Assembly: GCA_002269645.1 (NCBI GenBank)
Contig: NIVC01000432.1
Coordinates: 248,001-312,000, forward strand
Direction of reading: 5' to 3'
DNA: 64,000 bases
Source: Macrostomum lignano
Taxonomy: Eukaryota
The notes below the pieces were generated by a model. It had not been told where the DNA came from and made no database searches. It saw only the letters and a list, made by a program, of their open reading frames with translations. A program made the position numbers and the translations under genes. Positions 4,171-61,884 of this stretch are shown here, piece by piece (within the stretch, counting starts at the first letter, position 1; each line of letters starts with the position of its first letter).

Positions 4171-4615
4171 GGGACTGGCACGTCCTTGAAGCGCGGAGAA
4201 TCACGGCTGTCAGTCAGCAGCAGAGCCTGAAAGCAGCCGGTTTGGAATTTCTCTAAACAGAAAAAGCTCCGATTCTGCCGAAACAGAAAAAGCAGAGATG
4301 AAGACTAATATTACAAACCCAATTCAACAGTGAGTTTTTCGAGCCAGCAACAATGGGTCTTGGGATCAGACAATGGAGATTGTGGAGGAGGCATTGCAGT
4401 TTTACGGCTTCCCAGTCTCCATGCGATTGGGAAAAAAAGCGATTGCCCCGCACTCCAACCCGTTGAGTGGCTGAGCGGAGACAAAAGAAAATTGTTTACG
4501 AATGAGCTGCTGTGGGCTTTTGACATCCTGTCTGCCTCTGCTCATGGATGATGCATCAGCACCTTGCGATGGCGCTGTCTGATTTTGTCCCCTAATTGAT
4601 TCCCATCAGTTGCCT

Positions 4616-4891
<276 letters not shown>

Positions 4892-4907
4892 CCGCCCGAA
4901 CCCGCAG

Positions 4908-20300: not shown

Positions 20301-21822
20301 ACATGAACCGGTGCTCGTCGATAATGCAGAATATTTGGCCGTCCGGCTTTCGCCCAGTGAACAGTAGCAGTACGTCGCGTTTACCATTGGGCTTGAGTAC
20401 GACAGCGTCTAGCAGGCGGAGTGGCGAGCCGCCGTCGCTGCTCGGAGCCGAGCCGAACGCCGACTCGATAACGTCGGCCTGCTTCAGCCATTCCGCTGTA
20501 CTTTTAGCTGACGATTCGGCCTCTGGCCAGCTGGCTGAAGACAGCGGCGGCTGCGTAGACGTCATCGGTGCGGCCGACGGCTGCTCGTCAACGTCGACGG
20601 AGGCTTCAAAGATTGGCTTCTTGAGCTTGTAGGGCACCGCGGCGGACTCGTCCGGCCGGACTAGAGCTATGGCCACGAGCTGGTTGTCCTCGGTGAGGGC
20701 AACTAACAGCCGGCATTCTTCCGCGTCGCCGCTCTGTATGGCGCTGAATAGGCGTTGAAAAAATGCGTCGCTAACAACTATAGTTGAGATGCCGCCAGAT
20801 TTGTAACCGAGATCGAATCGAGCAGACAGCAGATTAACGTCCGACTCGAGGCTGTAGCCGCAGTCAACTCGGAGCTGTTGATCGCCAGAATGCCGGCCAA
20901 TCTGGGGCAGATACTCGGCGCTGAGCAGCGGCTGTTGAACAATCGGCACAATGTACACCGCCCGATTAACTAAACCGTCCAGGTCGCGAGCCATCAAGTT
21001 GCGCAATATTTCAATAATCTTGTCGTGATTATTAATACGCGACATCATGCTCTGCAGAGCGGCGCTTGGACCGTAGAACATAGAAGAGTGATTGTTGCTA
21101 GGCTTGCACACTTCGGTGTACAGAGCATCCAGCTCATCGTTGCGCACTGAACTCCTTAGAAAACTGGTGTACACGTCCAAGTCGGCTCGACTTTTTAGCG
21201 CCGTAGCGATGCTGCTGTAAATATTGGAGCCCCAACTGGACTTGGCGGTTGTTGAAGACATCGCAGCCGCGGGCGTTGCAGCCGCGTCGCCGGCTCCGCC
21301 AGTAGCGGCGCGACGACCCGAGGCAGCTCCGCCGCCGGGGGGACGGCCGCGTCGCTTCTGACCGGAGGCCGGCGTCCGTCGCTGATCCTCGGAGATGATG
21401 CTCTGAGCATCGAAATCGTAGATGTCTCGCTTAGCTCCGCCAACCACGGCATCGTCGTCTTCGTCCTCTTCGAACAAGTCGGCCCTGGCGCCGGAGCCGT
21501 TGGCGGCGGCGCTGCGCCGCGCGCTGGCCGGTCGGCCGATCTTGCCGCCGCCGCGCCTGCCGGGAGTCCGCCTGGCCGACGAAGCGCCGCCGCGTCCGGG
21601 ATGCTTTGGCGAAGCGTCCGGCTCATAATCTGAGTCCTCTTCTGCTGACAGGGCCGCGGCCGCGGCGTTGGACCGGCCAACGCGAACAACAACCTCCTCC
21701 TCGTCGTCTTCTTCGCTGTCGACGCCTTTTGGCGTGTCCAGCGGCACGTCCTCTTTGACTTTGCGCGACAGGCGACCAGACCGGGTGCGAGTGCCCGAAA
21801 CAGGAGGCTTGCTGTCTGTCAT
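14361..21822 (-). CDS. AT-hook and multi-C2H2 zinc finger protein, 1492 aa
   Basis: Exons 21822-19861, 18757-17840, 17326-16884, 16273-15691 and 14933-14361 total 4479 nt in one frame. Three junctions rebuild split fingers (CDLCGDFY|GTKHNFYFHQWAEH, CDACPFWGFLRSVMDHSR|IVH, CQICGK|VVTQIAMHMLTH). About 18 C2H2/C2HC fingers are present, plus an AT-hook (KRRGRPP). The exon 1 join relies on a CAG|GTGAGA donor at 19861 in phase 0 with the acceptor at 18757. Confidence 0.88.
15005..15650. repeat. Intronic minisatellite, 33-34-bp unit CACTCAGTGAACTGCCGCTAATCCCAGCTCGAAC
   Basis: About 19 copies in zinc finger intron 14934-15690. Confidence 0.95.
16345..16820. repeat. Intronic minisatellite, 28-bp unit GGCTGGCCCAGCAACTGAGGATCTGGGA
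   Basis: About 17 copies in intron 16274-16883. Confidence 0.95.
17575..17780. repeat. Short intronic duplication, about 66-bp unit built of TTACTGA sub-repeats
   Basis: Two good copies plus degenerate flanks. Confidence 0.75.
18875..19710. repeat. Intronic minisatellite, 20-bp unit TTTGGCGCTATAATCTTGAC
   Basis: About 41 copies in intron 18758-19860. Confidence 0.95.
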
Positions 21823-33001: not shown

Positions 33002-33499
33002 TGTTTCTAGCAATGTCACGGCATACGCATGCTGTCCAGTAATTTGTTGATTTAAAAATCTTTGCCTCCCGTCACATTAGTTACTCTTGTGCTTTTAATC
33101 ATTTAAAAAAATTGATTTTCTGAGCTTTGTCTATGATCGAATTGGGCAAAGGCTGAAGCTATTTTTGTCAGTAGTGCTCTGCACTGTTTATTAGTTAGAT
33201 TTAAATATAGAACTTCATTGTATTTGGAGCATTTTCATAATTTCTATGGTCAAATCTCTGACAAAAACGGCACAGAGTTCAAGCACTAGCCCATGGAGTT
33301 GTATAATATTGACGTTGCGTAGTAGGTAAGGGGCTGAAATAATGGCCAAACACGAGTGCGCGTTGCTTGAACTCGTACGAGCTATATACTCGTAAACAGC
33401 ATTTGGAGTGGACGCTGACGTGTGCCTATAAAGATGAACCTATGGTAGCTAACAGCTTATTGGTTAGGTGTTTAAAGTGTCAGAATCGCAGTGCCATCT

Positions 33500-37500: not shown

Positions 37501-40500
37501 TAATTAATCCCGAGAATCATCCCTAATTAATCCCTAGAATCATCCCGAATTGATCCCGAGAATCATCCCTAATTAATCCCGAGAATCATCCCGAATTGAT
37601 CCCGAGAATCATCCCTAATTAATCCCGAGAATCATCCCGAATTGATCCCGAGAATCATCCCTAATTAATCCCGAGAATCATCTCGAATTGATCCCGAGAA
37701 TCATCCCTAATTAATCCCGAGAATCATCCCGAATTGATCCCGAGAATCATCCCTAATTAATCCCGAGAATCATCCCTAATTAATCCTGAGAATCATCCCG
37801 AATTGATCCCGAGAATCATGACCAAATTTACCAGTCCCGCTGTTAAATTTCACCCGCCCCCTACAGAGCGAGTACATGGTGCAGCTGTACGACTCCTTTG
37901 CTGCACCCGAGATGAACCTGCTGGCTTATCTTATCGAGGTAAGAGATACTCTTCTTTTGTTGCTTTTCATTCTTTGGGAAATTTTGTCCTGTTTTTGTTT
38001 CTTGTCTTTTAATTTTAATTTTTTGTATAATTTTTCTTCTAGTGTTTGTCGTCTTAGTCTTTTCTTGTCTTTGTTCTTGTCTTCTCAATCTTTGTTCTTG
38101 TCTTCTCAATCTTTTTTCTTGTCTTTGTTCTTCTCTTCTCAATCTTTTTTCTTGTCTTTGTTCTTGTCTTCTCAATCTTTGTTCTTGTCTTCTCAATCTT
38201 TGTTCTTGTCTTCTTGGTCTTTGCGCTTGTCTTCTATTCTCGCTTTGCTTCCGTATACTGTTCTATCCATTTGGCATTTACTAAAAATAGCCAAACGTTC
38301 CCACCCGTCCCCATCTCTGTCTCCCTCTCCAGTACCTGGAGATGCGCAACATCCAATTCGACCCGATGCAGCTGCACGCGGACGTGCGCGCCAGCATGGA
38401 GCAGCTGCACCGGTCCGGCAAGCTTCACGACGAGATCGTGCGCGATCCTGAGCGCTACCTGCGTCGGGACTCGCGCCTGGAGCCGCTGCTATCCCGGCTG
38501 CAGCGCAACGGCAAGAAAGTGTTCCTAGTGTCCAATAGCAACTATAACTTCATGTAAGTTAGCTGCTGTCATCTAGCCAGCTAGCTACTAATGTGCTTCG
38601 TATGCTACTTATCGTAGCTTTAATAGTAGAAAGCTAAGAATCTAATTTTGTTTTTGAAAAAAATTGCAGAGACGGCGGCCTCACCTATTTGCTTGGCAAA
38701 GATTGGCGTCAATATTTCGATTTAGTCATCGTACAAGCCAGGAAGCCTTTGTTCTTTACTAGCACGTCTAAGTGAGTTCATTTCACTTGGGATAGAACGG
38801 GAAGAGTGATTCACTTGGGGATAGAACGGGAAGAGCTATTCACTTGGGGGATAGAACGGAAAGAGCTATTCACTTGGGGGATAGAACGGGAAGAGCTATT
38901 CACTTGGGGGATAGAACGGAAAGAGCTATTCACTTGGGGGATAGAACGGGAAGAGCTATTCACTTGGGGGATAGAACGGGAAGAGCTATTCACTTGGGGG
39001 ATAGAACGGGAAGAGCGATTGATTCACTTGGGGGATAGAACGGGAAGAGCGATTGATTCACTTGGGGGATAGAACGGGAAGAGCGATTGATTCACTTGGG
39101 GGATAGAACGGGAAGAGCGATTCACTTGGGGGATAGAACGGGAAGAGCGATTCACTTGGGGGATAGAACGGGAAGAGCTATTCACTTGGGGGATAGAACG
39201 GGAAGAGCTATTCACTTGGGGGATAGAACGGAAAGAGCTATTCACTTGGGGGATAGAACGGGAAGAGCGATTGATTCACTTGGGGGATAGAACGGGAAGA
39301 GCGATTCACTTGGGGGATAGAACGGAATGAGCTATTCACTTGGGGGATAGAACGGGAAGAGCTATTCACTTGGGGGATAGAACGGGAAGAGCGATTGATT
39401 CACTTGGGGGATAGAACGGAATGAGCTATTCACTTGGGGGATAGAACGGGAAGAGCGATTCACTTGGGGGATAGAACGGGAAGAGCTATTCACTTGGGGG
39501 ATAGAACGGGAAGAGCTATTCACTTGGGGGATAGAACGGAAAGAGCTATTCACTTGGGGGATAGAACGGGAAGAGCGATTGATTCACTTGGGGGATAGAA
39601 CGGGAAGAGCGATTGATTCACTTGGGGGATAGAACGGGAAGAGCGATTCACTTGGGGGATAGAACGGAATGAGCTATTCACTTGGGGGATAGAACGGGAA
39701 GAGTGATTCTCTTGGGGGATAGAACGGGAAGAGCTATTCACTTGGGGGATAGAACGGGAAGAGCGATTGATTCTCTTGGGGATAGAACGGGAAGAGCTAT
39801 TCACTTGGGGGATAGAACGGGAAGAGCGATTGATTCACTTGGGGGATAGAACGGGAAGAGCTATTCACTTGGGGGATTGAACGGGAAGAGCTATTCACTT
39901 GGGGGATAGAACGGGAAGAGCTATTCACTTGGGGGATAGAACGGGAAGAGCTATTCACTTGGGGGATAGAACGGAAAGAGCTATTCACTTGGGGGATAGA
40001 ACGGGAAGAGCGATTGATTCACTTGGGGGATAGAACGGGAAGAGCGATTCACTTGGGGGATAGAACGGGAAGAGCTATTCACTTGGGGGATAGAACGGAA
40101 AGAGCTATTCACTTGGGGGATAGAACGGGAAGAGCGATTGATTCACTTGGGGGATAGAACGGGAAGAGCGATTGATTCACTTGGGGGATAGAACGGAATG
40201 AGCTATTCACTTGGGGGATAGAACGGGAAGAGCGATTGATTCACTTGGGGGATTGAACGGGAAGAGCTATTCACTTGGGGGATAGAACGGGAAGAGCTAT
40301 TCACTTGGGGGATAGAACGGAAAGAGCTATTCACTTGGGGGATAGAACGGGAAGAGCGATTGATTCACTTGGGGGATAGAACGGGAAGAGCGATTGATTC
40401 ACTTGGGGGATAGAACGGAATGAGCTATTCACTTGGGGGATAGAACGGGAAGAGCGATTCACTTGGGGGATAGAACGGAAAGAGCTATTCACTTGGGGGA

Positions 40501-42091
40501 TAGAACGGGAAGAGCTATTCACTTGGGGGATAGAACGGGAAGAGCGATTGATTCACTTGGGGGATAGAACGGGAAGAGCGATTCACTTGGGGGATTGAAT
40601 GGGAAGAGCTATTCACTTGGGGGATAGAACGGGAAGAGCGATTGATTCACTTGGGGGATAGAACGGGAAGAGCGATTCACTTGGGGGATAGAACGGGAAG
40701 AGCGATTCACTTGGGGGATTGAATGGGAAGAGCGATTGATTCACTTGGGGGATAGAACGGGAAGAGCGATTCACTTGGGGGATTGAATGGGAAGAGCGAT
40801 TGATTCACTTGGGGGATAGAACGGGAAGAGCGATTCACTTGGGGGATTGAATGGGAAGGAAGAGAGATTCTCTCGGGAAAAAAAACAAGACAGAAAGGCG
40901 ATTATCTTGTGGATTCAATGGAAAAGATTTATTATGAAAAATCCCAAGTTTCAAACAGACCAAATTTAGCAGCATGCCCTGCTACTGTCAGTACAGTAAT
41001 AGGCACTATAAACTTAACTTTTGTCCCAGGCCTTTCCGTCACTTGTGCACGATCGGCGGCCAGCCCTCATGGCACTCTGTTGAGTCGCTGGAGCCGCACT
41101 CCGTCTATAGCGAGGGCAACGTGACCGCCCTGCACCAGCTCACCCAGTGGAAGGGCGAGAGGACCCTGTTCTGCGGCGATCACGTCTCGTCCGACTTACT
41201 GGACGCTTCGTTGCAGCACGGCTGGCGCACCGGGGCTGTCATACCGGAACTGGCCCAGGAGCTGCGTTCCATGTCGTCGGATCGATACAGGGAGAATGTC
41301 TATTGGCTGGATCAGCTGGAGAGGCTGATCTCAGAGATGCAGGTGCGAATTGCTTGTTTATATTGGCTTCTTTTGTTTATTACCTGCTCCTGTCTCGGTT
41401 TATTACCTGTTCCGGTTTTGGTTGATTACCTGCTCCTGTCTCGGTTGATTACCTGCTCCTGTCTCGGTTGATTACCTGCTCCTGTCTCCGTTTATTACTT
41501 GCTCCTGTCTCTGTTCATCACCTGTTCCTGCCTCGGTTGATTACCTGTGCCAGAATCCATTTACCTGTGCCAGAATCAATTCACCTGTGCAAGAATCAAT
41601 TCACCTGTGCCAGAATCAATTTACCTGTGCCAGAATCAATTCACCTGTGCCAGAATCAATTTACCTGTGCCAGAATCAATTCACCTGTGCCAGAATCAAT
41701 TTACCTGTGCCAGAATCAATTCACCTGTGCCAGAATCAATTTACCTGTGCCAGAATCAATTCACCTGTGCCAGAATCAATTCACCTGTGCCAGAATCAAT
41801 TCACCTGTTCCCCAAACCGCACCTCAGGTGTACGACAGCCACCCTGACTGTCGCGGCCTGCTCGAACTGTGGCTGGAGGAGCGGCGCAACCTGCTAGAGG
41901 ACATCTCCGGCATGACTAACATTTACTTTGGCTCAATATTTCGCACGCACAATCACGTTTCATTCTTTTGCAGGCGTCTGGCCCGCTACGCAGATGTTTA
42001 TATGTCCTCCATCACTAACTTGCTCAACTATAAGCTCACCCACACGTTCTATCCGCCTAGGGTGAAACTGCCGCACGAGCAAGTGCTGTGA
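34545..42091 (+). CDS. NT5DC: 5'-nucleotidase domain-containing protein (HAD superfamily, NT5DC2/3-like), about 547 aa
   Basis: Exons 34545-34813, 36713-37115, 37867-37938, 38333-38553, 38670-38771, 41030-41342 and 41828-42091 total 1644 nt in frame. HAD motif I ([11 protein letters not shown]), [50 protein letters not shown] and [10 protein letters not shown] are present. The start could be 34545, 34569 or 34740. Confidence 0.93.
35130..36490. mobile_element. Foldback-like insertion in NT5DC intron 1
   Basis: Imperfect inverted arms (CTAAC.GC.CCCGTTGGA..AGGCAT.AAAGGTG at about 35240-35300, inverted at about 36400-36475) and many AGGTG/CACCT motifs in both orientations. It interrupts a degenerate GAAATATCCCATTTTGGGATT array on both sides. 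Confidence 0.45.
37180..37820. repeat. Intronic minisatellite, 23-bp unit GATCCCGAGAATCATCCCGAATT
   Basis: About 27 copies, two alternating variants. Confidence 0.95.
38040..38230. repeat. Intronic TC-rich repeat (TTCTTGTCTTCTCAATCTTTG)
   Basis: Tandem variants of about 21 bp in intron 37939-38332. Confidence 0.85.
38780..40860. repeat. Intronic minisatellite, 30/34-bp unit TTCACTTGGGGGATAGAACGGGAAGAGCTA
   Basis: About 66 copies beginning about 10 nt after the donor at 38771. Confidence 0.97.
41380..41815. repeat. Intronic minisatellite, 20-bp unit ACCTGTGCCAGAATCAATTC with degenerate 5' portion
   Basis: Tandem copies ending about 15 nt before the acceptor at 41827. Confidence 0.92.
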
Positions 42092-42920: not shown

Positions 42921-44088
42921 GCTAGCTACAGAGTTAGCTAGTCTTTCTCCCTCTTCCAGTAATAAGAGACCTTTTTCAACATCGAAGTGAGTGTAGATGC
43001 AGATTCAATTTGTAAAAGTTATAGTCAAATCTGTGTTTATTGTCTGTTCTCTGGTTGTGCTTTTGTTTTCTCATAAGAAGCATAAAATTAGAAAGATATA
43101 AATTGTCTACTTCATAAATATTTAGCCTCCTAAATATTTATTAATTAAATTTCTCCTGTTTATACTTTTTCATTTCGTTAATTTAGTTTTCACTTCTGTG
43201 TCTATTATATTTTAAATGTAAATTTTTGCACCTTTTACTATAAGTAGCCAGATAAGCAGTACAGTTCTATAATTTGGATTCACAGTGTGTATTTAGAACA
43301 GCTGATTTAGGGGGCAGGAGTTGCTATCATCATCATAAATCTATGTTTTGTATTTACCAATCTGGTACTTTCAACTCTATAGCTCCTTGGCGCCTGGATT
43401 GAATGAGCTTTTTGCGAAAACGGATTTTTTCTGCTAGGATAAGAGATTACAATATGCACTATTGAATATGCGTGTCTGTCAGCTTTAATTAACTGTTTTT
43501 GTCAATTATTGCTGGCATTTTCTGTGTTTAATTATGCACTGCTTTTTCATGTTTAGGATTTTTTATTTGCAAAAACAATATTTTTAAACCGTATTTGTTG
43601 TACGCCAGAAAATATATAGATGTACACTGTCTGTTGACACTTGGATGTCAGAAATAAGATGCTTCATGTCTTACCTCAATATTGTAACCTCGCTTGGATT
43701 GATTTAATTTTTGTTTTAACAGTAGGAATGTCAAGCCATTTTTCCGCCCGTCGAACTACCAAGAGGGGGGGGGGATTTCCGGCGCAGCTGACAATTTTTT
43801 TGCTGCGCCGGAACGGAGCAACGCAGGCACACGAAATTCAAACAAGAATCAAGTCGCCAGCCTTCGGACCGTCGAAATATTCGACGATTCTGCCAGAAGG
43901 TCGGATTTTTCCCATAAGTGCTAGTGTATTCAGTACACCTCTGTGCGCCAATTAGCACTGCGCCTCAGTGCAGCCTTACCAAGTCTGTAAATTTCATCAG
44001 CACGTCGACCACATGTGTCTGCATCAGCTCTGACTTCGTTGGTCACTAGCCTTCATCCAGGTGGAGCTTCTGGACCCTCAACAGGTGG

Positions 44089-45305
44089 CACCAGGTGACT
44101 ATGGACACCCTGATGCGGATTTCTCTAGTTTCGCCGATCAAGCCTCGACAGTGGGCAAAAATCAACCGCCAGACATTCTCAGCTAGTTTCTCAAGCATTC
44201 CGTCATCATCCCGACGCCGTCGGCTCCTTCAACAGATTACACCAGGTGACTATGGACAGCCTGATGCGGATTTCTCTAGTTTCGCCGATCAAGCCTCGAC
44301 AGTGGGCAAAAATCAACCGCCAGACATTCTCAGCTAGTTTCTCAAGCATTCCGTCATCATCCCGACGCCGTCGGCTCCTTCAACAGATTACACCAGGTGA
44401 CTATGGACAGCCTGATGCGGATTTCTCTAGTTTCGCCGATCAAGCCTCGACAGTGGGCAAAAATCAACCGCCAGACATTCTCAGCTAGTTTCTCAAGCAT
44501 TCCGTCATCATCCCGACGCCGTCGGCTCCTTCAACAGATTACACCAGGTGACTATAGACAGCCTGATGCGGATTTCTCTAGTTTCGCCGATCAAGCCTCG
44601 ACAGTGGGCAAAAATCAACCGCCAGACATTCTCAGCTAGTTTCTCAAGCATTCCGTCATCATCCCGACGCCGTCGGCTCCTTCAACAGATTACACCAGGT
44701 GACTATGGACAGCCTGATGCGGATTTCTCTAGTTTCGCCGATCAAGCCTCGACAGTGGGCAAAAATCAACCGCCAGACATTCTTAGCTAGTTTCTCAAGC
44801 ATTCCGTCATCATCCCGACGCCGTCGGCTCCTTCAACAGATTACACCAGGTGACTATGGACAGCCTGATGCGGATTTCTCTAGTTTCGCCGATCAAGCCT
44901 CGACAGTGGGCAAAAATCAACCGCCAGACATTCTCAGCTAGTTTCTCAAGCATTCCGTCATCATCCCGACGCCGTCGGCTCCTTCAACAGATTACACCAG
45001 GTGACTATGGACAGCCTGATGCGGATTTCTCTAGTTTCGCCGATCAAGCCTCGACAGTGGGCAAAAATCAACCGCCAGACATTCTCAGCTAGTTTCTCAA
45101 GCATTCCGTCATCATCCCGACGCCGTCGGCTCCTTCAACAGATTACACCAGGTGACTATGGACATCCTGTTGCAAATATGTCAGGTTTTTCTAATCAAGC
45201 TTCAATAATGGGCAAACCTCAACTGCCGGACATTCTCAGCTAGTCTCTTGAGCCTTCAGTCATCACCCCGACGCCGTCGGCACCTTCAACAGATTACACC
45301 AGGTG
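44089..45305. repeat. 151-bp tandem repeat, 8 copies
   Basis: Units start CACCAGGTGACTATGGACAGCCTG. Seven are near-identical and the last is diverged. Confidence 0.96.
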
Positions 45306-45529
45306 ACTATATTGGGTTCAAACTATAATATTGAACCCAATTTTTATGCAGAAAGGGTTATGCTTTTAAAAAATGAAAAAAACCTAAATTCCATTTGCGT
45401 GCCAGTAAATTCAATCGGGGATTTAGAGAATAAAAAAACAAATATAACCAATTTTTTGTTAGAGGCAAGGGGGCTGGCTGTGTGCACCATGGCGCGAGAG
45501 GCATTGCTGCCCATTCCACCGACTCCCTT

Positions 45530-46677: not shown

Positions 46678-49600
46678 TCACCTCCTCGGTGGTCGGCCGC
46701 GGCCCCTGCCGCCGGCAGAGTTAGCATTTGCCGTTTGAACTCGCTTGCCCTTGTCTTCCCAGTCCAGATCGGCGTCCTCCTCGGCTGAAACTTTGAACAG
46801 CTTCTTCTGCTTCTTGATGCTGGCCGGCTTCGTGTCGCTGTTGTCGTTCAGGTCGCCAACCGCTGTCACAGCGTTGAGTGACTGGATGGGTAGCGAGTGT
46901 TTATTGTTGAAGGCAATATTGTTGCAACCGGATGCTTTAATCGCCGTTATCGAATCCTACCCATAACCATACGCTCTTAACACCAAGGATATCTCGAGTG
47001 TACCTTTCTTTGAATTGTCCTAGAGGGGCGGGGACTGAGTAACGGAGCGGAAAAACATCCGATTCCGACCATAACCCCTGGTTCGATTTCGTGCGCGGCC
47101 CAAATTCATTTGGGGCTAATTGTGTGCACGAAAATGGTTGTGAGACGATGTAGTCAAAACTGTTGAACCAAGAGGCCACGTATAATTTCGAGTAATGTTC
47201 TGGTATAATCAGCATTTCCAGAATCTTACCCAGTCGAAAAAGGCAGCCGCAGCGGCGCTCTTCAATGCCACCTCCTTCACGTCCAGATTGGACACCAGCT
47301 CTCTCGCTCTGGCCGCAATCGTCGGGTGAACGCTGGCCGGATCTAGCCGGTTAAAGTCGGCAACCTTCAGCGCACGGATCAGGGGCTGACAACGGCGCCA
47401 TTTCTGCAATAGGAACAGCGATAGCGATAGCACTACTACTCGTTCCTTTCCGATTTTCTACCCAGCCAAACACCCACCTCACTCCTTGCCCCTCCCCTCC
47501 CGCGCTCATCCAAGTCTATCCGATTTTCCACCCAGCCCAACACCCACCTTGCCTCTCCCCTCCTGCGCTCATCTAGGCCTTTCCGATTTTCCACCCAGCC
47601 AAACACCCACCTCACTCCTTGCCCCTCTCATCCCGCGCTCATCCAAGTCTATCCGATTTTCCACCCAGCCCAACACCCACCTCACTGCTTGCCCCTCCCC
47701 TCCCGCGCTCATCTAGGCCTTTCCGATTTTCCACCCAGCCAAACACCCACCTCACTCCTTGCCCCTCTCATCCCGCGCTCATCCAGGCCTTTCCGATTTT
47801 CCACCCAGCCAAACACCTACTTTATTCCCTGCCCCTTCCATCATCGCTCATCCAAACAACCCCAAAGTTCTATCTTTTTTCATTGATACCTCTAGGCGGT
47901 CGTTATCTTAGTATGCACTGCACTTACCCTAGTACGCTTCTCATAGTATCCCATGAGGAGCAGCACGGACATGCAGGTGATGTGCACGCACTTATCCGGG
48001 CTGGAATAGGAGGCCAGCTCCAGCTTTGACTTCTCGTCAAGATTCAGCGGCTTTATGGTGATCTTGTCGATTCGATCGAATCGTCGATAGACTTCCAAAG
48101 CGCGGCGCACGTCTGGGTCCAGTTCGGCCAGAATTTCGTCCATAAAGAACTCATTGTCGATCTCTTCTAGTACTTTGCCGATGTACTCTTTGTCTCGCTT
48201 GGCTTTGGCCTCTCGGATGCTGTCTTTTAGCTCTATTTTTGTGAGGAATCGAAAATATTTTTATGCGCGTTCGCCCACTGAAGGAGGTGCAAGATACGTC
48301 CCCAAATTCGGCATCTGCTTCAACCCTTTGGCAACCCAATTCACTCACTCTCTCGCAGCTCCATCATCCGATAGTAGCTCTTAGAGAATATAAACAGATC
48401 GTCATTCAGAGAGAATTTATTCTCCTCCCACTCGTCCATGGCTCGCTTCAGCGGCTTCATCTTCTTGCGGCGCAGGGCCTCGAGCAGCTGGCCGCGGCAG
48501 TATTTCCTTAGTTCGCCTGAATCGGAACAGAGAGGATGATGGGAGCGTGCTATAAGGGCCTAACAGACGTACGAGCGTACATGTGGACTTAATTTTCTAT
48601 ATAGAAAATCGAACTCACGTTTCTCCCGCTCTTCGCGCTTCCTGGCTTTTCGCTCGTCACGTGACTCACCGCCCCCAGCCGCTCCTTTGCGGCCACCGAC
48701 AGCCTTGCCGGACCTTCGGCCCGTTTCGTCGGCCGAGGACTCCGACCGGCTGCGTGACCGAGATCGAGATCTGGACTGGGATTTAGAGTGGGATCGGGAT
48801 CGGGATCGGGACCGGGATCGGGATCTAGACCGGGATCGAGACTCTCGGGCTTTCGACGGCGACGACTGACCCGACTTCTTGACCGGCGATGCCGACTTGG
48901 ACGAAGAAGATTTTTCTTCCGTCGCCTCTCCACCGTCGTGCTTGGAGCCGCCGCTGGACTTCGAGGACGCTGCCGAGCCCGGTCGATGCTGCTTCTTGGC
49001 GCCGCCGCCTGCGGCCTCCTCTGCGGCCTCCTTGCGCCGGCCCTCCTCCTGGCGCTGGCGCTCCTGACGCTCGGCTTCCCGCTGCTCGCTCTGCTCGTCA
49101 CGGCGCCGATTCCGCGCCTCGGCCTCTTTCCCGCCGGCCTCCTCCCGGCGCCGCAGCTCCGCCTCGGTGAGCACCCGGTAGGACAGCAGCGCCTGGCCGC
49201 CGCAGCGAAGCTCAAACCGACTGCCCTCCGCCTCGGTCGGCAGGTCGCCCGTCCAGCAGTCGCCATCCAGTTGAAATGGCGTCTCCCCCGCGAACACGCC
49301 AACGTTTTCACCGTTGACCTCGCCGAGGTCGCCGACACGCAGTCGGATCGGCGCCGCACAGCCCGGCGCCAATTCGCCGTCCAGGCCGCTGCTCTCCAGA
49401 CGGCAGGCCGGGGCTCGCCAAGCCGGTCCGAGTGTCGGGAAGGCAACCGGCGGTTCGTCGAGACGGGCGCAGCTGCGGATCAGGTAGGTGTACACCAGCT
49501 CGCGGTTGCTGTCATCAGCGTCGGCGAACAGCCTCAGCAGATGGCAGCCATTCTCAGCAAAGCGCACCCGAAACTCGGTGCCGTCTCCAACGTCAACGCC

Positions 49601-52600
49601 CTGGTTGAACAGCTGGCCATCAGGCAGACGGCGAAGCGAAGCCGAGCCGACGTCGAATTTGTACAGCTCGGCGCTCAGCCGCTCAGTGGGCCGGTGCCGC
49701 CAGGCCAGGCAGATCTCCGGCTCGCTGGCCCGGATGTACGGTGACTTCGGCTCCGGCCTGGCGTTCATAGCCTTCAGCCTGGCTGCGGCGGCTTCGTCCG
49801 GGCAGGCCAGGCTGCCGATCAGGTGCATCGGCGGCAGCGGGTCCTCCGAGCCGTCGGCGCCGACCTCCGACTCCAGCAGGTAGTCGCACACCGGCTCGAA
49901 TTGGCCTTTTTTGTCGGAGCGGCGCCTGGCGCGGATCGCCAGGCCGAACCGGCCGGCGCCGGGCGCCACCACATGGACGAGGTCGAAGCCGTCCTGGTGC
50001 CACACCAGCGGCTCGTAGTCAGCCAGCGGCTCCGTGTCCAGCTGGCTGCGCAGCTCGCAGCGGTACTCCAACTCGTCCTGCTTAGCCCGCAGCTGGATCG
50101 TCTGCTCGCCGTCCTGCAGCCGGATCTCCGCATCCGGGTGACTCACCGCCTCCACGCCGATCTTCTCCGCTCGGGCACCAAGGCCCCACTCGTCCGCTTG
50201 GTTCTCCGGCATTGGCTCGACGAAGTCGCTGGCCCGACGGCAGTGCAGCACGTAGTGCACCAGGTCCATCATCTGGCCGGCCGCCGCCGAGCCGCCCGCC
50301 GCCGGACTACCATCGCTGTGGCCCTGCGGAGTGGGAGAATCAACGGTTGAATCTGCCTGGAACCCCTGTCCGAAACTACTCCGAACTCTTGTCCGAAACT
50401 AATCTGAACTCCTGTCCGAAACTACTCCGAACTCTTGTCCGAAACTAATCTGAACTCCTGTCCGAAACTACTCCGAACTCTTGTCCGAAACTACCTAGAA
50501 TCCCTGTCCGAAACTACTCCGAACTCTTGTCCGAAACTACCTAGAATCCCTGTCCGAAACTACTCCGAACTAATGTCCGAAACTAATCTGAACTCCTGTC
50601 CGAAACTACTCCAAACTCCTGTCCGAAACTACTCCGAACTCCTGTCCGAAACTACTCCGACCTCCAAACTACCCGGAATATCTGTCCGAAACTACCCTGA
50701 ACATCTGTCCGAAACTACCCGGAGCCATCGTCTGAACCTACCTAGAGCCCCTGTCCGAAACTACCTGGAATCCCTGTCCGAAACTACTTTGAACTCCTGT
50801 CCGAAACTACTCTGAACTCTTGTCCAAAGCTATTTCGGATCCCTGTCCGAAGCTACTCGGAATCACTGTGCGAAACTACCCAGCATCCCTGTCCGAACTG
50901 CCCGGAATCCCTGTCTGAAACTACTCGGAATCACTGTCCGAAACTACCGACTTTTGAAACAACCCGGAATCTCTGTCCGAAACTGCCCGGAATCACTGTC
51001 CTGAACTGCCCGGAATCGCTGTCCGAAACTACCCGGTATCATTGTCCGAAACTACCATAAGCCACTCACCTGCAGCACCAACAGGTACTTGCCCGGCTTT
51101 GGCGGGTAAACCTCAATTTGCAGTTGATTTCCGGCCCGCTTCACCGCCAGAAATCTGGCTAGCTTGATCTGCTTCTGCCGGAAGTTGATGGTGTCGCTGG
51201 AGTGGATGTACAGCAGCGCCATGTACTCGTGAATCTCGCCGGACTCCTCCAGTTCGATGCTCAACCGTCCGGAGTGCGGCACCAGCGCTACGGACTTCTT
51301 GTGGCTGAGCAGCCTCAGGCCGAATGCCTCAACCAGGTCGGGGAAAAGGTAGGGCAGCTGCTCGAACTGATCCTTGGTCAGCGGCTCCGGCAGCAGCTGC
51401 CACTCCGGCCTCTCCGGGAAGTGCTTGAAGATCATCTTCCACGGGTCGGTGAGGAAGTAGGTCTCGTTGCACGAGTACACCACGGTGCCCTGAGTCCTAG
51501 TCGACGTCTGCACTCCGCCGTCTTCCTGGATCCTGTTCCACTCGCCGCTGTTCTCCCCGGACACGTGGCAGCAGCCCCAGTGCGCGTCGACGAATCGCCA
51601 TTCGCCGTCGATTAGCACGGCGAACCAGAGGCCCCGGTCGCGGTTCGGCTCAATGCGCTGCCCGACTCGGTAGGAGGTGCCCTTCTTGTATCCGCGAACC
51701 AGCTCGTAGTCCACGTCTGCGTACCTGCGGGAGCCGGGTTCGGGGGAGTTCGTGGGTTGGGATTCTGGGATTTACGGGTTGGGATTCTGAGATTCGCGGG
51801 TTGGGATTCTGGGATTTGCGGGTTGGGATTCCGGGACTCACGGGTTGGGATTCCGGGACTCACGGGTTGGGATTCTGAGATTTGCGGTTTGGGATTCTGG
51901 GATTTGCGGTTTGGGGTTCTGGGATTTGCGGGTTGGGATTCTGGGATTTGCGGGTTGGGATTCTGGGATTATCAGGTTGGGATTCTGGGATTATCGGGTT
52001 GAGATTCTGAGATTATCGAGTTGGGATTCTGAGATTTACAAGTTAGGATTCTAGGGTTTGCGGTTTGGGATTCTGGCATTTTCGGGTTGAGATTCTAAGA
52101 TTTGTTGTTCGGGATTCTGGGATTTACGGGTTGGGATTCTGGGATTTACAGGTTGGGGTTCGGGGATTTACGGGTTAGGATTCTGAGATGAGTGGTTTGG
52201 GATTTTGGGATTTAATTTTGGGATTCATCGACACATGTAGCTGTTTTTCGATTCTATTACGTTACTCTGTCCAGAACTTATTTTCAGACATCCATGCCTG
52301 CTAGTAACTCTAAAGGTCTGCGTTAAGCCATGTGCTACTGAAACTGTTCGATGAAGCTCAGTTAATTAACGATCCTCCAAGCCAGGCAGGCATCATCAAC
52401 TTAGATTACTTTTTTTCAAAGTCGGACGAGGCTTCAAACTCAGACGATGAAACGAGAAAGAGAGCAGGAGAGGCTGGGAGTTCGTCATTGAGCCCCTTCT
52501 CCCACTTCAAACTGGACTCCGGATGGCAACCCCCCCCCCCAGTTAATAATCGACCCGAGACGGGCGGCCACCTGCCTGCCTAGTTTTTTCTTTCTCTTCT

Positions 52601-54633
52601 TACTTCTCTTTTTCTTCTTCAGTTATGCATTCTTAGAAAGCGACGAGGCGTTGTCAATGGTAACGATGGGCGATTCAGTGAGACGGGATGGAAGGAGGAG
52701 AGAGTTGCCAAAATTTTTTCTTCCCCAGCCCCATCGCCAGCTTCCGGGATCTGAGAACGGGGAAGCTGGAGGATCGGAGAAGTCAGGTTGCAAAAATGAG
52801 AGAGAGGGAAAGTTGAGGGTAAATATCCTGAGCTTGGGGAGATCCTGAGCTGTCTCCACGGACTCCAACAAAGCGATTAATTGGCTTTCCATTTTGACAT
52901 TAAACTGGCACCGGCAGAGAGCTCTCATAGAGATAGATGACAGCCTATCATCCTATGGCTTTGCCTGATAGACAGACAGTGCTGCAGTTGGTTTGCTTTG
53001 GTGTGGCACCAGTGCATTTTGTGTGCTCTCGAGTATCCGGTTTCTATAGCATTGACAGACACTAACCGATAAGCACACAGGACAGACACACACCGATAAG
53101 CACACAGGACAGACACACACCGATAAGCACACAGGACAGACACAAACCGATAAGCAAACAGGACAGACACACACCGATAAGCACACAGGACAGACACACA
53201 CCGATAAGCACACAGGACAGACACAAACCGATAAGCAAACAGGATAGGGACAGACACAAACCGATAACCACACAGGACAGACACAAACCGATAACCACAC
53301 AGGACAGACACACACCGATAAGCACACAGGACAGACACACACCGATAAGCACACAGGACAGACACACACCGATAAGCACACAGGAAAGACACACACCGAT
53401 AAGCACACAGGACAGACACACACCCATACGAGCGTAAGCACACAGGACAGACACACACCGATAAGCACACAGAACAGACACACACCGATAAGCACACAGG
53501 ACAGACACACACCGATAAGCACACAGGACAGACACACACCCATACGAGCGTAAGCACACAGGACAGACACACACCGATAAGCACACAGGACAGACACACA
53601 CCCATACGAGCGTAAGCACACAGGACAGACACACACCGATAAGCACACAGGACAGACACACACCCATACGAGCGTAAGCACACAGGACAGACACACACCG
53701 ATAAGCACACAGGACAGACACACACCCATACGAGCGTAAGCACACAGGACAGACACACACCGATAAGCACACAGGAAAGACACACACCGATAAGCACACA
53801 GGACAGACACACACCGATAAGCACACAGGACAGACACACACCGATAAGCACACAGAACAGACACACACCGATAAGCACACAGGACAGACACACACCGATA
53901 AGCACACAGGACAGACACACACCGATAAGCACACAGGACAGACACACACCGATAAGCACACAGGACAGACACACACCGATAAGCACACAGGACAGACACA
54001 CACCGATAAGCACACAGGACAGACACACACCGATAAGCACACAGGACAGACACACACCGATAAGCAAACAGGACAGACACACACCGATAAGCACACAGGA
54101 CAGACACACACCGATAAGCACACAGGACAGAGACGGACGACTCACGCGATGATTCGCTGGAAGAGCGCTGAGAAAAGTTTCTCCTGCCGACAGCGCGCCA
54201 GAATGTCCAGCGGCGAGTCCTTCTTCCTGCCCTCGGCATCCCGCCCGGCCCTGGCCGGGTCCGCCTGTCCGACCCATTCGAAAGCGGCGCGCACCTTCTC
54301 CAGGTCTGTCTGGCACTTGCAGGTGTCCATCAGTGTGCGAGTGAACGACTCCCAGGTGTCGTCCTCCGTCGGCAGTACCTGTCTGGCCAGCGGGCCGATA
54401 TGTGCCAGGTCCTCCGGCCGGTACAGGTCCGCCCGGCAACGGTTGCTAGGATAGGGCAGCGGCCGCGTGCCCGGCTCGAGCGGTGATTTCAGCGGCTTGC
54501 GGCCGCGGGTCATCTGCACGCGACGGAGCTCGTCAAGGGTGAAGCCGACGCTGGGGTCGCCTAAGCTTTCGGGGTTGATCTCTTCGCCGGCCTGGCCGCT
54601 CCTGTTGGTGTCCTGCTCTGTCGATTCGGCCAT
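46678..54633 (-). CDS. KY/hillarin-like transglutaminase-fold protein with a C-terminal dynein-MTBD-like domain, 1232 aa
   Basis: Exons 54633-54146, 51724-51070, 50323-48619, 48516-48349, 48232-47928, 47403-47230 and 46881-46678 total 3699 nt in frame with GT-AG sites. Family motifs: [64 protein letters not shown]...[15 protein letters not shown], followed by repeated beta-rich P..G.Y.L...Y modules. Confidence 0.9.
47445..47850. repeat. Intronic minisatellite, about 70-bp unit
   Basis: CCGATTTT recurs at 47450, 47520, 47583, 47653, 47723 and 47793. Confidence 0.9.
50365..51050. repeat. Intronic minisatellite, about 22-bp unit CTGTCCGAAACTACTCCGAACT
   Basis: Degenerate tandem copies filling intron 50324-51069. 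Confidence 0.9.
51755..52220. repeat. Intronic minisatellite, 22-bp unit GCGGGTTGGGATTCTGGGATTT
   Basis: About 21 copies. Confidence 0.9.
53060..54130. repeat. Intronic minisatellite, 27-bp unit CCGATAAGCACACAGGACAGACACACA
   Basis: About 38 copies, with a longer CCCATACGAGCGTAAG variant. Begins about 15 nt from the minus-strand donor at 54145. Confidence 0.96.
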
Positions 54634-59540: not shown

Positions 59541-60627
59541 TTTGGTCGCCCAAAAATTTGTAGTGACCATAAAAATGTAGATAAGAGAATTTTATTGCTT
59601 AATAAGTTTGCGATAGTTACGTGTACGTATATCCTTCAGCTATCTACCGTTTATCACAAATACCACTCTGTAATCTATAGATGTGTCTCAAATATCAGAT
59701 ATTTTTTGTTGATTAAAGTACTCTTGCATCCAATATTGTACTGTATGCGCTTATTATATAAAATAAATATAATGATAAACTCACGCGTCTGCACTGTTGT
59801 TGCGGAAGCACCCATATGTCATATTTGATTAATAATGATATTAGCATGTACTGCGATTAGAGTGAAACAGCTAAAGGTTGTTTTTTGCAACCGTCTTTTA
59901 CTTGGTTGCACAAACGCACAAACAAAAACCTTTCTAATTATTCACAGGTACATGTATATTGGTATATTTATATTATATATGCTGTCCATAGCGCAACCAG
60001 CCCATTGAAACATTGTGAGCATTCACTAAGTTCACTCACTTATTTACAATTAGCCGCTAACAAAAGTCGTTGTTAACTGTGGGCGTCCACTTGACTTTCT
60101 CTTTTCCGGTACATCAAACAGCGCCCCCTCTCTCTCTTTGTTCACCTGTGGAGCCAGATTTCAAGGAATTAGCAGTCGCATCCCCCTGTCACACTGCCTC
60201 GGGCGACAGATAGCTGGCTTCTTAGAAACCGAAGGCTTACCGTCTCTCTCCAGCCGAAAAATCCCCGGCCGTTAATTTTTACCTTTGTGAATTTCCGCTT
60301 AAAGATTTTTTCTCTTTAACGTAGCGCCGCTGGTCACGCGATAGTTCAGGCTAATCACTCCGAGGGGAGAGAGAAAGTTAAGATAAGACTGGACAGGGCT
60401 GTCATCCTATACAGTAAAGTGGACAGTTGGCTGGCGGACTAACTGCTGAGCCACTGCCGGGCTGGGGTAACGTCATGGACCCCTCAAAATGTGTCGTTGG
60501 ACTGGAACGAGCCGAGAAATATTGGTCAAAATGAATGCTTGAAATTTATTGACAGAGAAAAGCACTTTTGCTTCCTTTTTTGCAAGAAGATCGTCTCAGT
60601 TTAAACATTCGAATATATTGAAGTTCT

Positions 60628-61482
60628 TATGTCATGTGCATATATGTCTCACTCGCTTATGTCATGTGCATATATGTCTTCTCACTCGCTTATGTCATGT
60701 GCGTATATGTCTCGCTCGCTTATGTCATGTGCATATATGTCTCGCTCGCTTATGTCATGTGCGTATATGTCTCGCTCGCTTATGTCATGTGCACATATGT
60801 CTCGCTCGCTTATGTCATGTGCGTATATGTCTCGCTCGCTTATGTCATGTGCATATATGTCTTCTCACTCGCTTATGTCATGTGCATATATGTCTTCTCA
60901 CTCGCTTATGTCATGTGCGTATATGTCTCGCTCGCTTATGTCATGTGCACATATGTCTCGCTCGCTTATGTCATGTGCGTATATGTCTCGCTCGCTTATT
61001 TCATGTGCGTATATGTCTCGCTCGCTTATTTCATGTGCGTATATGTCTCGCTCGCTTATGTCATGTGCATATATGTCTCGCTCGCTTATGTCATGTGCGT
61101 ATATGTCTCGCTCGCTTATGTCATGTGCGTATATGTCTCGCTCGCTTATGTCATGTGCATATATGTCTTCTCACTCGCTTATGTCATGTGCGTATATGTC
61201 TCGCTCGCTTATGTCATGTGCGTATATGTCTCGCTCGCTTATGTCATGTGCGTATATGTCTCGCTCGCTTATGTCATGTGCATATATGTCTTCTCACTCG
61301 CTTATGTCATGTGCGTATATGTCACGCTCGCTTATGTCATGTGCGTATATGTCACGCTCGCTTATGTCATGTGCGTATATGTCACGCTCGCTTATTTCAT
61401 GTGCGTATATGTCTCGCTCGCTTATGTCATGTGCGTATATGTCTCGCTCGCTTATGTCATGTGCGTATATGTCACGCTCGCT
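60628..61482. repeat. Minisatellite, 30/33-bp unit TTATGTCATGTGCGTATATGTCTCGCTCGC
   Basis: About 28 copies. Accounts for ORFs 60549-61587. Confidence 0.96.
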
Positions 61483-61884
61483 AATGCCTCGGCTCCGCTC
61501 TCCAGTCCAGGGGCTCGTGAAGGGGTCCATGAACAGCGGCAGATAGAAAAGCCGAACGGATTCAAATATATTCCAAAACCCAAGTAGCTCTTTTATGCTT
61601 CATCGCCCCCTTAGATACCCCCTACCCCCCCCCCGTGTCCATCTGCCTCTGGTTGTCTTTGCGTGCGCTGCGGCCTCTGCGCGCTTCCCCGACCGTCCCG
61701 TCTCGCCTCCAGCGCTCGGCAACGAGCACAGCGCATAGGGAAGCCTTGCTTGCCCGAATTTCTCAATAATAAATCCCCATGGAGATTAGCCGAGCAAAAG
61801 GGAATTAATCTGGGTCACGGAAGCGGTGCGCCTGGTCTGCTGTTGGCTTTTATTTTGGAAAGCAATGTCTCTGGATTGTGCAGA

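What the first reader, a model, noticed from the sequence alone, without database searches (positions are those of the whole stretch)
46678..48232. Inactive transglutaminase-fold (KY/hillarin-like) protein carries a free-standing dynein stalk MTBD-like domain
Seen: once spliced, the last exons encode [40 protein letters not shown]...[48 protein letters not shown], preceded by a helical charged segment. Established: the dynein heavy chain stalk-tip microtubule-binding domain (Pfam PF12777 region) follows the pattern EL+S+..PP..V..V..AV..LLG...W...K..L...F...L..FD...I...............V...S.AA..L..WV.A. Inference: this motor-less protein uses a dynein-like MTBD to bind microtubules, acting as a cytoskeletal scaffold rather than an enzyme. 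Invertebrate hillarin-like proteins may already carry this domain as an automatic annotation. I cannot check that, and I know of no functional test.
Basis: partly seen in the sequence, partly recalled or inferred. Interest (0 to 1): 0.72.

Follow-up and report, generated by a model that had tools for sequence, protein, structure and literature searches.

The report
Motor-less protein with dynein microtubule-binding domain
A seven-exon animal gene encodes a catalytically dead transglutaminase-like (KY-type) protein whose C-terminus is a true relative of the small domain that dynein motors use to grip microtubules, here without any motor, and the same module turns up at the cytoplasmic end of many other uncharacterised animal proteins.

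Summary
On the minus strand, seven GT..AG exons (54633 to 46678) give one 1232-aa ORF, and the last three exons encode exactly the quoted peptide. A profile of the window's C-terminus plus 59 relatives hits isolated dynein microtubule-binding domains (MTBDs) in PDB at E=2.7e-11. It also hits about 40 dynein heavy chains, always at the stalk tip, and nothing else is significant. The window's own narrow clade against a small dynein MTBD alignment gives hhalign probability 96.5%. An AlphaFold2 model of a 65%-identical relative (pLDDT 91) returns dynein stalk/MTBD entries as its first 21 Foldseek hits. The protein has three Ig-like_KY domains, no AAA+ domain, and a transglutaminase-like core lacking the catalytic Cys and His. 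Most members have no room for a return coiled coil. About 100 sequence clusters from sponge to amphioxus and tunicate carry the module. In CLCA/VWA/mucin-like members it follows a single transmembrane helix, so it is cytoplasmic. Microtubule binding remains an inference: three of six published tubulin salt-bridge residues are kept in the window protein. UniRef already auto-names two flatworm relatives "MT domain-containing protein". No paper in the searched library describes this.

The parts
54146..54633 (-). Exon 1: ATG at 54633, residues 1-162, first half of the transglutaminase-like pseudo-core
   Evidence: ATG start and GT donor. Aligns with the Transglut_core regions of relatives with no gap at the junction.
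51070..51724 (-). Exon 2: second half of the transglutaminase-like pseudo-core (LWFAV...FVDAHW) and the first Ig-like_KY domain
   Evidence: AG acceptor and GT donor. Ig-like_KY hit. The catalytic His is replaced by Leu and the Asp is kept.
48619..50323 (-). Exon 3: further Ig-like_KY domains, then a Glu/Arg/Lys-rich and Arg-Ser dipeptide linker (residues about 800-949)
   Evidence: One continuous ORF. Ig-like_KY E=5.1e-13. The RS run starts at residue 877.
48349..48516 (-). Exon 4: start of the helical pre-module (residues 950-1005)
   Evidence: Canonical splice sites. Aligned with family members in A1.
47928..48232 (-). Exon 5: remainder of the helical pre-module, the end of a CC1-like helix, and MTBD helix H1 ([31 protein letters not shown])
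   Evidence: Contains the invariant Glu1077, equivalent to yeast dynein E3122.
47230..47403 (-). Exon 6: MTBD helices H2-H6 ([10 protein letters not shown]...[10 protein letters not shown])
   Evidence: Contains the invariant Trp1109. Arg1110 and Arg1117 sit at the positions of yeast R3152 and R3159.
46678..46881 (-). Exon 7: short CC2-like stub ([11 protein letters not shown]), a conserved acidic/basic tail ([30 protein letters not shown]) and the TGA stop
   Evidence: The tail is conserved in P0001 and P0002 and is modelled at pLDDT about 95.
47230..48020 (-). MTBD core, Glu1077 to Trp1165 (89 residues; the span includes the 524-bp intron 5)
   Evidence: Coordinates. Same length as the yeast dynein core (91 residues) and net charge +5. 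Matches dynein MTBDs.
47445..47854 (.). 70/140-bp minisatellite filling intron 5, which interrupts the MTBD coding sequence
   Evidence: Tandem Repeats Finder.

Best explanation
The window holds a seven-exon gene for a 1232-residue cytoplasmic protein of the KY (kyphoscoliosis-peptidase-like) type. It has a transglutaminase-like core that has lost its catalytic Cys and His, three Ig-like_KY domains, a charged and Arg-Ser-rich linker, and a C-terminal module of about 280 residues. The heart of that module (Glu1077-Trp1165) is a homologue of the six-helix microtubule-binding domain at the tip of the dynein stalk. It is preceded by about 110 residues of helices. It is not followed by the long return coiled coil (CC2) or by any AAA+ motor. 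Shown: the gene structure, the homology, the predicted fold, the lack of motor and CC2, and the recurrence of the module at the cytoplasmic C-terminus of many animal proteins. Inferred: the module works as a passive, nucleotide-independent microtubule anchor. Dynein switches affinity by sliding CC1 against CC2, and with no CC2 the domain would be fixed in one affinity state. The pseudo-enzyme and Ig domains would then tether some partner to microtubules, making the protein a scaffold rather than an enzyme or a motor.
For: Gene model: all junctions are GT..AG and give a single ORF. It is collinear with P0001 over three junctions and with P0004 and about 30 long relatives over both ends. Homology: the family profile A1 against PDB hits isolated yeast dynein MTBDs at E=2.7e-11 and about 40 dynein heavy chains of cytoplasmic-1, cytoplasmic-2 and axonemal classes at the stalk-tip position, with nothing else below 1e-3. 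The narrow-clade profile A3 still ranks dyneins as its top 16 hits (best E=0.003). hhalign of A3 against a dynein MTBD alignment gives probability 96.5%, E=7.8e-10, over 100 columns. PF12777 is hit by 22 of 60 members, and the sponge member P0030 exceeds Pfam's own cut-off. Fold: the AlphaFold2 model of P0001 with an MSA has pLDDT 91.1 and pTM 0.80. Its first 21 Foldseek hits are dynein stalk/MTBD entries or chains of over 3,000 residues from dynein-containing complexes. TM-scores normalised to the target are 0.69, 0.64 and 0.58 against the isolated mouse, yeast and DNAH7 MTBDs. Function: the invariant Glu equals yeast E3122, and the window keeps Arg at the R3152 and R3159 positions (residues from PMC7042235). 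The core net charge is +5. In four members with CLCA, VWA or mucin-like ectodomains, one transmembrane helix separates the ectodomain from the module, so the module is cytoplasmic. The 13 KY-type members scanned (window protein included) have no signal peptide or transmembrane helix.
Against: No binding data exist. The window sequence alone does not reach significance against dynein (E=0.26) and gets no PF12777 hit. The dynein 'PP' motif reads 'PD' in the window. Of the six published yeast tubulin salt-bridge residues, R3124 is Ala in the window (basic in 48 of 60 relatives), R3201 is not conserved at the exact column, and K3117 cannot be aligned unambiguously. Foldseek E-values are modest (best 3.3e-4), and superposition on whole stalks has rmsd of about 20 A, so the flanking helices are not arranged as a dynein stalk. 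The structural model is of a 65%-identical relative, not of the window protein. No transcript evidence was available for the splice junctions.
Confidence: 0.6

Rival explanations
1. The domain is a true dynein-MTBD homologue but has been repurposed. It no longer binds the microtubule lattice and instead binds another partner, such as soluble tubulin, another cytoskeletal polymer or a protein ligand, or it acts as a structural cap for the helical region.
For: Tubulin-contact residues are only partly conserved: R3124 is lost in the window clade, and R3201 and K3117 are not conserved in register. There is no CC2, so there is no dynein-type affinity control. The flanking helices pack differently from a stalk (rmsd about 20 A to whole stalks). 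A conserved extra tail is modelled with high confidence.
Against: The one acidic contact residue (E3122) is invariant in 60 of 60 members. Basic residues persist at or next to four of the five basic contact positions in much of the family. The core is net positive. The module always sits in the cytoplasm.
Confidence: 0.3
2. The resemblance is a chance or convergent similarity of a helical, coiled-coil-rich segment and not homology.
For: The single-sequence comparison is not significant (E=0.26). The window protein gets no PF12777 hit. The upstream part of the module is generic charged helix, which can attract coiled-coil matches.
Against: Isolated MTBD constructs that lack most of the coiled coil are the best hits (E=2.7e-11, bias 0.0). 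hhalign gives 96.5% over the globular core only. The invariant Glu, Pro, Trp and Ser-x-Ala-Ala...Trp motifs fall in the same order and spacing, and the core is 89 residues against 91 in yeast. The fold search returns dyneins only.
Confidence: 0.03
3. The gene model is wrong: the MTBD-like exons belong to a separate downstream gene and are not joined to the KY-type exons.
For: No RNA evidence was available. Introns are large relative to the exons and filled with minisatellites.
Against: Exon 3 is one ORF that runs from the Ig-like_KY domains into the linker, up to the residue before the module begins. All junctions are canonical and in phase. About 30 long relatives from flatworm, molluscs, annelids and amphioxus carry the same N-terminal and C-terminal parts in one protein.
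Confidence: 0.05

Closest known systems
Dynein heavy chain microtubule-binding domain (stalk tip; Pfam PF12777 'MT' region; e.g. PDB 6kjn, 6rzb, 3err)
   Same: Homologous globular core with the same order and spacing of motifs (E-[ILM]-x-x-Y/M...P...LLG...W...S-x-A-A...W). Same core length (89 against 91 residues). Same predicted helical bundle (TM 0.58-0.69 to isolated MTBDs). The invariant Glu matches the tubulin-contacting E3122 of yeast dynein.
   Different: It is not at the tip of an antiparallel CC1/CC2 hairpin: only 67 residues follow it (family median 32). No AAA+ ring, linker or tail is present. It lies at the C-terminus of unrelated proteins. 'PP' is 'PD' in the window. Several basic tubulin contacts are shifted or lost. 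Most of the family has a GKTGK-type insertion after helix H2 that dyneins and the window clade lack.
KY / kyphoscoliosis peptidase family (Transglut_core plus Ig-like_KY, PF23265)
   Same: Transglutaminase-like N-terminal core followed by repeated Ig-like_KY domains. Public records name relatives 'KY', 'Kyphoscoliosis peptidase' or 'KY-like immunoglobulin-like domain-containing protein'.
   Different: The catalytic Cys and His are absent, and the window protein does not reach the Pfam Transglut_core model. It carries the C-terminal MTBD-like module. From my own knowledge, not tested here, vertebrate KY lacks this module.
Hillarin (leech, Drosophila Hil) and yeast Cyk3: inactive transglutaminase-like cytoskeletal scaffolds
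   Same: A transglutaminase-like fold used without catalysis in a cytoskeleton-associated protein. This resemblance is drawn from the literature, e.g. PMC3718969 for Cyk3.
   Different: Pfam finds no LIM or SH3 domain in the window protein. Those proteins are not reported to contain a dynein-like domain.
Macrostomum lignano 'MT domain-containing protein' entries (UniRef A0A1I8GMU8 and A0A1I8G7H0; P0003 and P0005)
   Same: Closest named relatives of the C-terminal module (39-46% identity to the window in A3). Their automatic name shows that a PF12777 match was once recorded.
   Different: They are fragments or have other architectures; cluster-mate P0108 is labelled ankyrin-repeat. No study or function is attached. 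The current Pfam release no longer matches them at E<=0.1.

Membership tests
Dynein MTBD (PF12777 region) | Significant sequence-profile similarity to the MTBD core | tested here: met
   The family profile hits isolated MTBDs at E=2.7e-11 and about 40 dynein heavy chains at the stalk tip. hhalign of the narrow clade against a dynein MTBD alignment gives 96.5%, E=7.8e-10.
Dynein MTBD (PF12777 region) | Passes Pfam PF12777's curated threshold | tested here: not met
   The window protein has no hit at E<=10 or E<=0.1. Among relatives, 22 of 60 hit at E<1 (best 7e-7), and the sponge member P0030 passes (26.0 against 24 bits).
Dynein MTBD (PF12777 region) | Compact helical-bundle MTBD fold | tested here: met
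   The AlphaFold2 model of the 65%-identical P0001 has pLDDT 91.1. Foldseek TM to target is 0.69 (6rzb_C), 0.64 (6kjo) and 0.58 (6rza_X), and the first 21 hits are all dynein stalk/MTBD entries or chains of dynein-containing complexes. This is a model, not an experimental structure, and not of the window protein itself.
Dynein MTBD (PF12777 region) | Sits at the tip of a long antiparallel CC1/CC2 coiled-coil stalk | tested here: not met
   Only 67 residues follow the H6 Trp in the window protein; the family median is 32 and the minimum is 4. Superposition on whole stalks gives rmsd of about 20 A.
Dynein MTBD (PF12777 region) | Part of a heavy chain with an AAA+ motor ring | tested here: not met
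   Pfam on the full 1232-aa protein finds only Ig-like_KY. No relative is longer than 2303 aa.
Dynein MTBD (PF12777 region) | Conservation of tubulin salt-bridge residues (yeast K3117, E3122, R3124, R3152, R3159, R3201; PMC7042235) | tested here: inconclusive
   The window keeps E3122 (as Glu1077), R3152 (as Arg1110) and R3159 (as Arg1117). It loses R3124 (Ala1079) and R3201 (Leu1154, with Lys1155 adjacent). K3117 cannot be aligned unambiguously.
Dynein MTBD (PF12777 region) | Binds microtubules | not testable with these tools
   This needs co-sedimentation, TIRF or cryo-EM.
KY / transglutaminase-like family | Ig-like_KY domains (PF23265) | tested here: met
   E=5.6e-25, 88.4 bits against a cut-off of 27, three stretches.
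KY / transglutaminase-like family | Transglutaminase-like core (PF01841) | tested here: inconclusive
   The window protein has no PF01841 hit at E<=0.1. However, its N-terminus matches P0004 at E=3.5e-64 and aligns over the regions that hit PF01841 in seven relatives, four of which exceed the Pfam cut-off.
KY / transglutaminase-like family | Catalytic Cys-His-Asp triad | tested here: not met
   Cys and His are absent in the window protein and all seven aligned relatives. The Asp is kept in the window (FVDAHW) and in six of the seven relatives.
Hillarin | LIM domain (present in the Drosophila form) alongside the transglutaminase-like H domain | tested here: not met
   Pfam finds no LIM domain in the full protein. 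W180 repeats were not tested because no model was at hand.

The most novel reading that the evidence does not exclude
The dynein microtubule-binding domain escaped from a dynein gene early in animal evolution and became an autonomous, mobile microtubule-anchor module. It is now found from sponges to chordates at the cytoplasmic C-terminus of pseudo-enzymes (KY-type) and of type-I membrane proteins (CLCA-like, VWA, mucin-like). That would make it an unrecognised class of microtubule-associated proteins that tether membranes and scaffolds directly to microtubules without a motor.
Probability: 0.45. Interest if true: 0.8.

Novelty: new variant of a known kind. Interest (0 to 1): 0.62.

Why it matters
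To my knowledge, the dynein MTBD fold is treated as a part found only in dynein heavy chains, where a long stalk couples its tubulin affinity to ATP hydrolysis. A family of about 100 sequence clusters across animals that carries the same domain without stalk return or motor would be a natural experiment. It shows what the MTBD does when it is uncoupled from the motor, and it suggests a direct microtubule tether for KY-type pseudo-transglutaminases and for some single-pass membrane proteins. The human KY gene causes myopathy and its mechanism is unclear (PMC6078408). The hypothesis is directly testable with a small recombinant domain. The present evidence is computational only, and part of it already exists as an unexamined automatic label in UniRef.

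Tried and rejected
1. Pfam on the window's C-terminal 299 aa gave no PF12777 hit, so direct Pfam membership was rejected for the window copy.

2. A single-sequence PDB search gave only E=0.26 to DNAH10. That was suggestive but insufficient.

3. The search for homologous proteins with the C-terminus and with the profile A1 returned only 1 and 2 proteins, because the word pre-filter is swamped by coiled-coil words. Both searches were unproductive beyond supplying P0001.

I used P0001 as a stand-in, so the structure model is of a 65%-identical relative.

5. Single-sequence AlphaFold2 of P0001 was useless (pLDDT 42). Only the MSA-based run was used.

6. Seven literature searches found the dynein MTBD papers used for contact residues, but nothing on a dynein-like domain in KY, CLCA or other non-dynein proteins.

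7. I considered whether the roughly 100 upstream residues are homologous to dynein CC1. This was rejected as unproven, because isolated MTBD constructs score as well as full-length chains, so the upstream alignment adds nothing beyond generic helix similarity.

8. The source organism could not be established. The closest hits are all Macrostomum lignano, which suggests a macrostomid flatworm, but this was not verified.

Full report
**Observation**

The region 46678-48232 is coding on the minus strand. Stop-to-stop translation and inspection of the sequence let me build a seven-exon model. Its exons are 54633-54146, 51724-51070, 50323-48619, 48516-48349, 48232-47928, 47403-47230 and 46881-46678.

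Every junction is GT..AG, the phases are compatible, and the product is a single 1232-residue ORF from ATG to TGA. Each intron is largely filled by its own minisatellite array.

**Support for the gene model**

No transcript data were available. The spliced C-terminus is 65% identical (E=8e-122) to a 250-residue UniRef protein of Macrostomum lignano (P0001), with no gap at any of the three junctions it spans.

A local phmmer of the full product against 101 representative relatives shows about 30 long proteins that match both the N-terminal transglutaminase/Ig part and the C-terminal module. One is the 1217-aa M. lignano protein P0004 (E=1.4e-94). Exon 3 itself is one ORF running from the Ig-like_KY domains into the linker, up to the residue before the module begins.

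**N-terminal part of the protein**

Pfam finds three Ig-like_KY stretches (E=5.6e-25) and nothing else in the full product. Relatives have Transglut_core plus Ig-like_KY, and public records call them KY, kyphoscoliosis peptidase, or transglutaminase-like or KY-like Ig domain-containing proteins.

Aligning the window N-terminus with seven such relatives shows that the catalytic Cys and His positions are occupied by other residues in all of them. The Asp is kept in the window protein and in six of the seven relatives. The subfamily is therefore a pseudo-enzyme.

**C-terminal module: sequence evidence**

- Alone, the window sequence gives no PF12777 hit. Its top PDB hit is weak, at the stalk tip of DNAH10 (E=0.26).
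- An exhaustive phmmer search with P0001 against 1.84 billion cluster representatives found 101 clusters at E<=1e-3. None is longer than 2303 residues, so none is a dynein heavy chain.
- A 60-sequence alignment (A1) has the consensus ...LDQxTxxEIRSYxxPPxxVHxVMxATxLLLG...W...SxGAAxFYxW, with an invariant Glu and Trp.
- The A1 profile matches isolated yeast dynein MTBD constructs at E=2.7e-11 with zero bias. It also matches about 40 distinct dynein heavy chains (cytoplasmic 1 and 2; axonemal DNAH2, 6, 9, 10 and 17; protist dyneins), always at the stalk tip. Nothing non-dynein scores below 1e-3.
- Scanned individually, 22 of the 60 members hit PF12777 (best E=7e-7). The sponge member P0030 exceeds Pfam's curated threshold.
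- A profile of only the window clade (six sequences, A3) still ranks dyneins as its top 16 hits (best E=0.003).
- hhalign of A3 against a three-sequence dynein MTBD alignment, built from dynein segments the tools had printed, gives probability 96.5% and E=7.8e-10 over 100 columns.

**C-terminal module: structural evidence**

Single-sequence AlphaFold2 failed (pLDDT 42). With a 53-sequence MSA the P0001 model reached pLDDT 91.1 and pTM 0.80.

Foldseek against PDB returns dynein stalk/MTBD entries, or chains of over 3,000 residues from dynein-containing complexes, as its first 21 hits. TM-scores normalised to the target are 0.69 (mouse MTBD 6rzb_C), 0.64 (yeast 6kjo) and 0.58 (DNAH7 6rza_X). E-values are modest, with a best of 3.3e-4.

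**How it differs from dynein**

- There is no AAA+ domain.
- The MTBD core from the invariant Glu to the H6 Trp is 89 residues, against 91 in yeast dynein.
- Only 67 residues follow the core in the window protein. The family median is 32 and the minimum is 4. That is not enough for a return coiled coil.
It is preceded by about 110 residues of helices that show a two-fold internal repeat pattern in the family consensus.
- In the Macrostomum clade it is followed by a conserved tail (PAS-I-x-x-QKK...EED-x-DLDWED-x-G-x-R) that is modelled with high confidence.

**Does it bind microtubules?**

This cannot be tested here, but three indirect observations bear on it.

First, I mapped the six salt-bridge residues of yeast dynein (K3117, E3122 and R3124 on H1; R3152 and R3159 on H3; R3201 on H6; PMC7042235) onto A1.

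| Yeast residue | Family (60 members) | Window protein |
|---|---|---|
| E3122 | Glu in 60/60 | Glu1077 (kept) |
| R3124 | basic in 48/60 | Ala1079 (lost) |
| R3152 | basic in 29/60 | Arg1110 (kept) |
| R3159 | basic in 10/60; next column 38/60 | Arg1117 (kept) |
| R3201 | basic in 4/60; previous column 30/60 | Leu1154 (lost; Lys1155 follows) |
| K3117 | alignment ambiguous | alignment ambiguous |

Second, the core is net positive: +5 in the window protein, a family median of +3, and -1 for the yeast core by the same count.

Third, a prediction was tested. If the module acts in the cytoplasm, members with extracellular-type N-terminal domains must place a membrane span before it. All four examined do so with one strong hydrophobic helix between the ectodomain and the module: two amphioxus CLCA-like proteins (each also with an N-terminal signal-peptide-like segment), a Styela VWA protein, and an amphioxus mucin-like protein whose helix scores more weakly. 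None of the 13 KY-type members scanned, the window protein among them, has a transmembrane or signal segment.

**Distribution**

Named members come from the following groups:
- a sponge (Oscarella pearsei);
- a flatworm (Macrostomum lignano);
- gastropods and a bivalve;
- annelids (Helobdella, Owenia, Ridgeia, Dimorphilus);
- amphioxus;
- a tunicate (Styela).

N-terminal partners include KY-type, CLCA plus VWA, VWA alone, mucin-like, and, by source labels only, ankyrin-repeat and CARD proteins. No vertebrate or arthropod member appeared among the 30 representatives whose names I looked up. This is not a systematic survey.

**What is already known**

UniRef auto-names two M. lignano relatives (P0003, P0005) "MT domain-containing protein", which is the Pfam PF12777 short name. 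The current Pfam release no longer matches them.

Searches of the paper library found nothing on a dynein-like domain in KY, transglutaminase-like, CLCA or other non-dynein proteins, and the term "MTBD-like" does not occur at all. The domain assignment therefore exists only as an unexamined automatic label on a few entries. The family, its architectures and its possible role are undescribed in the literature available here.

**Verdict**

The functional reading, a passive motor-less microtubule anchor on a pseudo-enzyme scaffold, is the most likely mechanism at about 0.6. It rests on homology, partial contact-residue conservation, charge and cytoplasmic placement, not on binding data. The main rival, at about 0.3, is a true homologue that now binds something else.

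I classify it as a new variant of a known kind: a known domain in a context that lacks the stalk and motor that define its known setting.

Noticed in passing
window 1-64000 (e.g. 1837-3281, 7047-8270, 38782-40858, 44078-45310, 60626-61486): The window is packed with roughly 25 distinct minisatellite arrays (periods 16-151 bp, up to 2 kb each). Introns 1, 2 and 5 of the KY-type gene each hold arrays of their own (four arrays in total: 53054-54131 and 51754-52213 in intron 1, 50360-51056, 47445-47854).
   Followed up: partly
window 48756-48838 (minus-strand coding; residues about 877-915): A run of Arg-Ser dipeptides (RSRSRS...) in the linker between the Ig domains and the module coincides with a GGGATC-type microsatellite. 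It could be an SR-like phospho-regulated linker or simply a coding repeat expansion.
   Followed up: no
window 46681-46836 (residues 1181-1232): A C-terminal tail ([30 protein letters not shown]) is conserved in the Macrostomum clade (P0001, P0002) and modelled at pLDDT about 95. It may pack on the helical region in place of dynein's CC2, but the model coordinates could not be inspected.
   Followed up: partly
P0087, P0100 (Branchiostoma CLCA-like), P0075 (Styela VWA), P0073 (Branchiostoma mucin-like): Single-pass membrane proteins carry the same MTBD-like module at the end of their cytoplasmic tail. This suggests a direct membrane-to-microtubule tether.
   Followed up: partly
P0108 (M. lignano, 1097 aa) and P0116 (B. 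floridae, 1423 aa): Cluster-mates of module-bearing proteins are labelled by UniRef as ankyrin-repeat and CARD domain-containing, which hints at further architectures. Pfam found nothing in P0108 at E<=0.1, and P0116 was not scanned.
   Followed up: partly
window 4610-5236 and 8368-8889, plus strand: These ORF pieces look like the SH2 end and the kinase domain (HRDLAARN...DFGLSR...) of a Src-type non-receptor tyrosine kinase. An ACAG microsatellite is translated at the start of the first piece. The identification is by eye only.
   Followed up: no
window 14361-18757, minus strand: Several ORFs carry C2H2 zinc-finger motifs (one gene or a cluster), interrupted by 28-bp and 34-bp minisatellites.
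   Followed up: no
window 19831-21822 and 30614-33019, minus strand: Two long ORFs (663 and 801 aa) with low-complexity, Gln- or Ala-rich stretches and no obvious family. They were not searched.
   Followed up: no
A1 consensus, module residues 950-1069 of the window protein: The helical region before the MTBD shows a two-fold repeat of about 47 residues (L..A....D...L......A...L..L) across the family. Three members weakly hit DUF7939 (PF25607). Its identity is unresolved.
   Followed up: no
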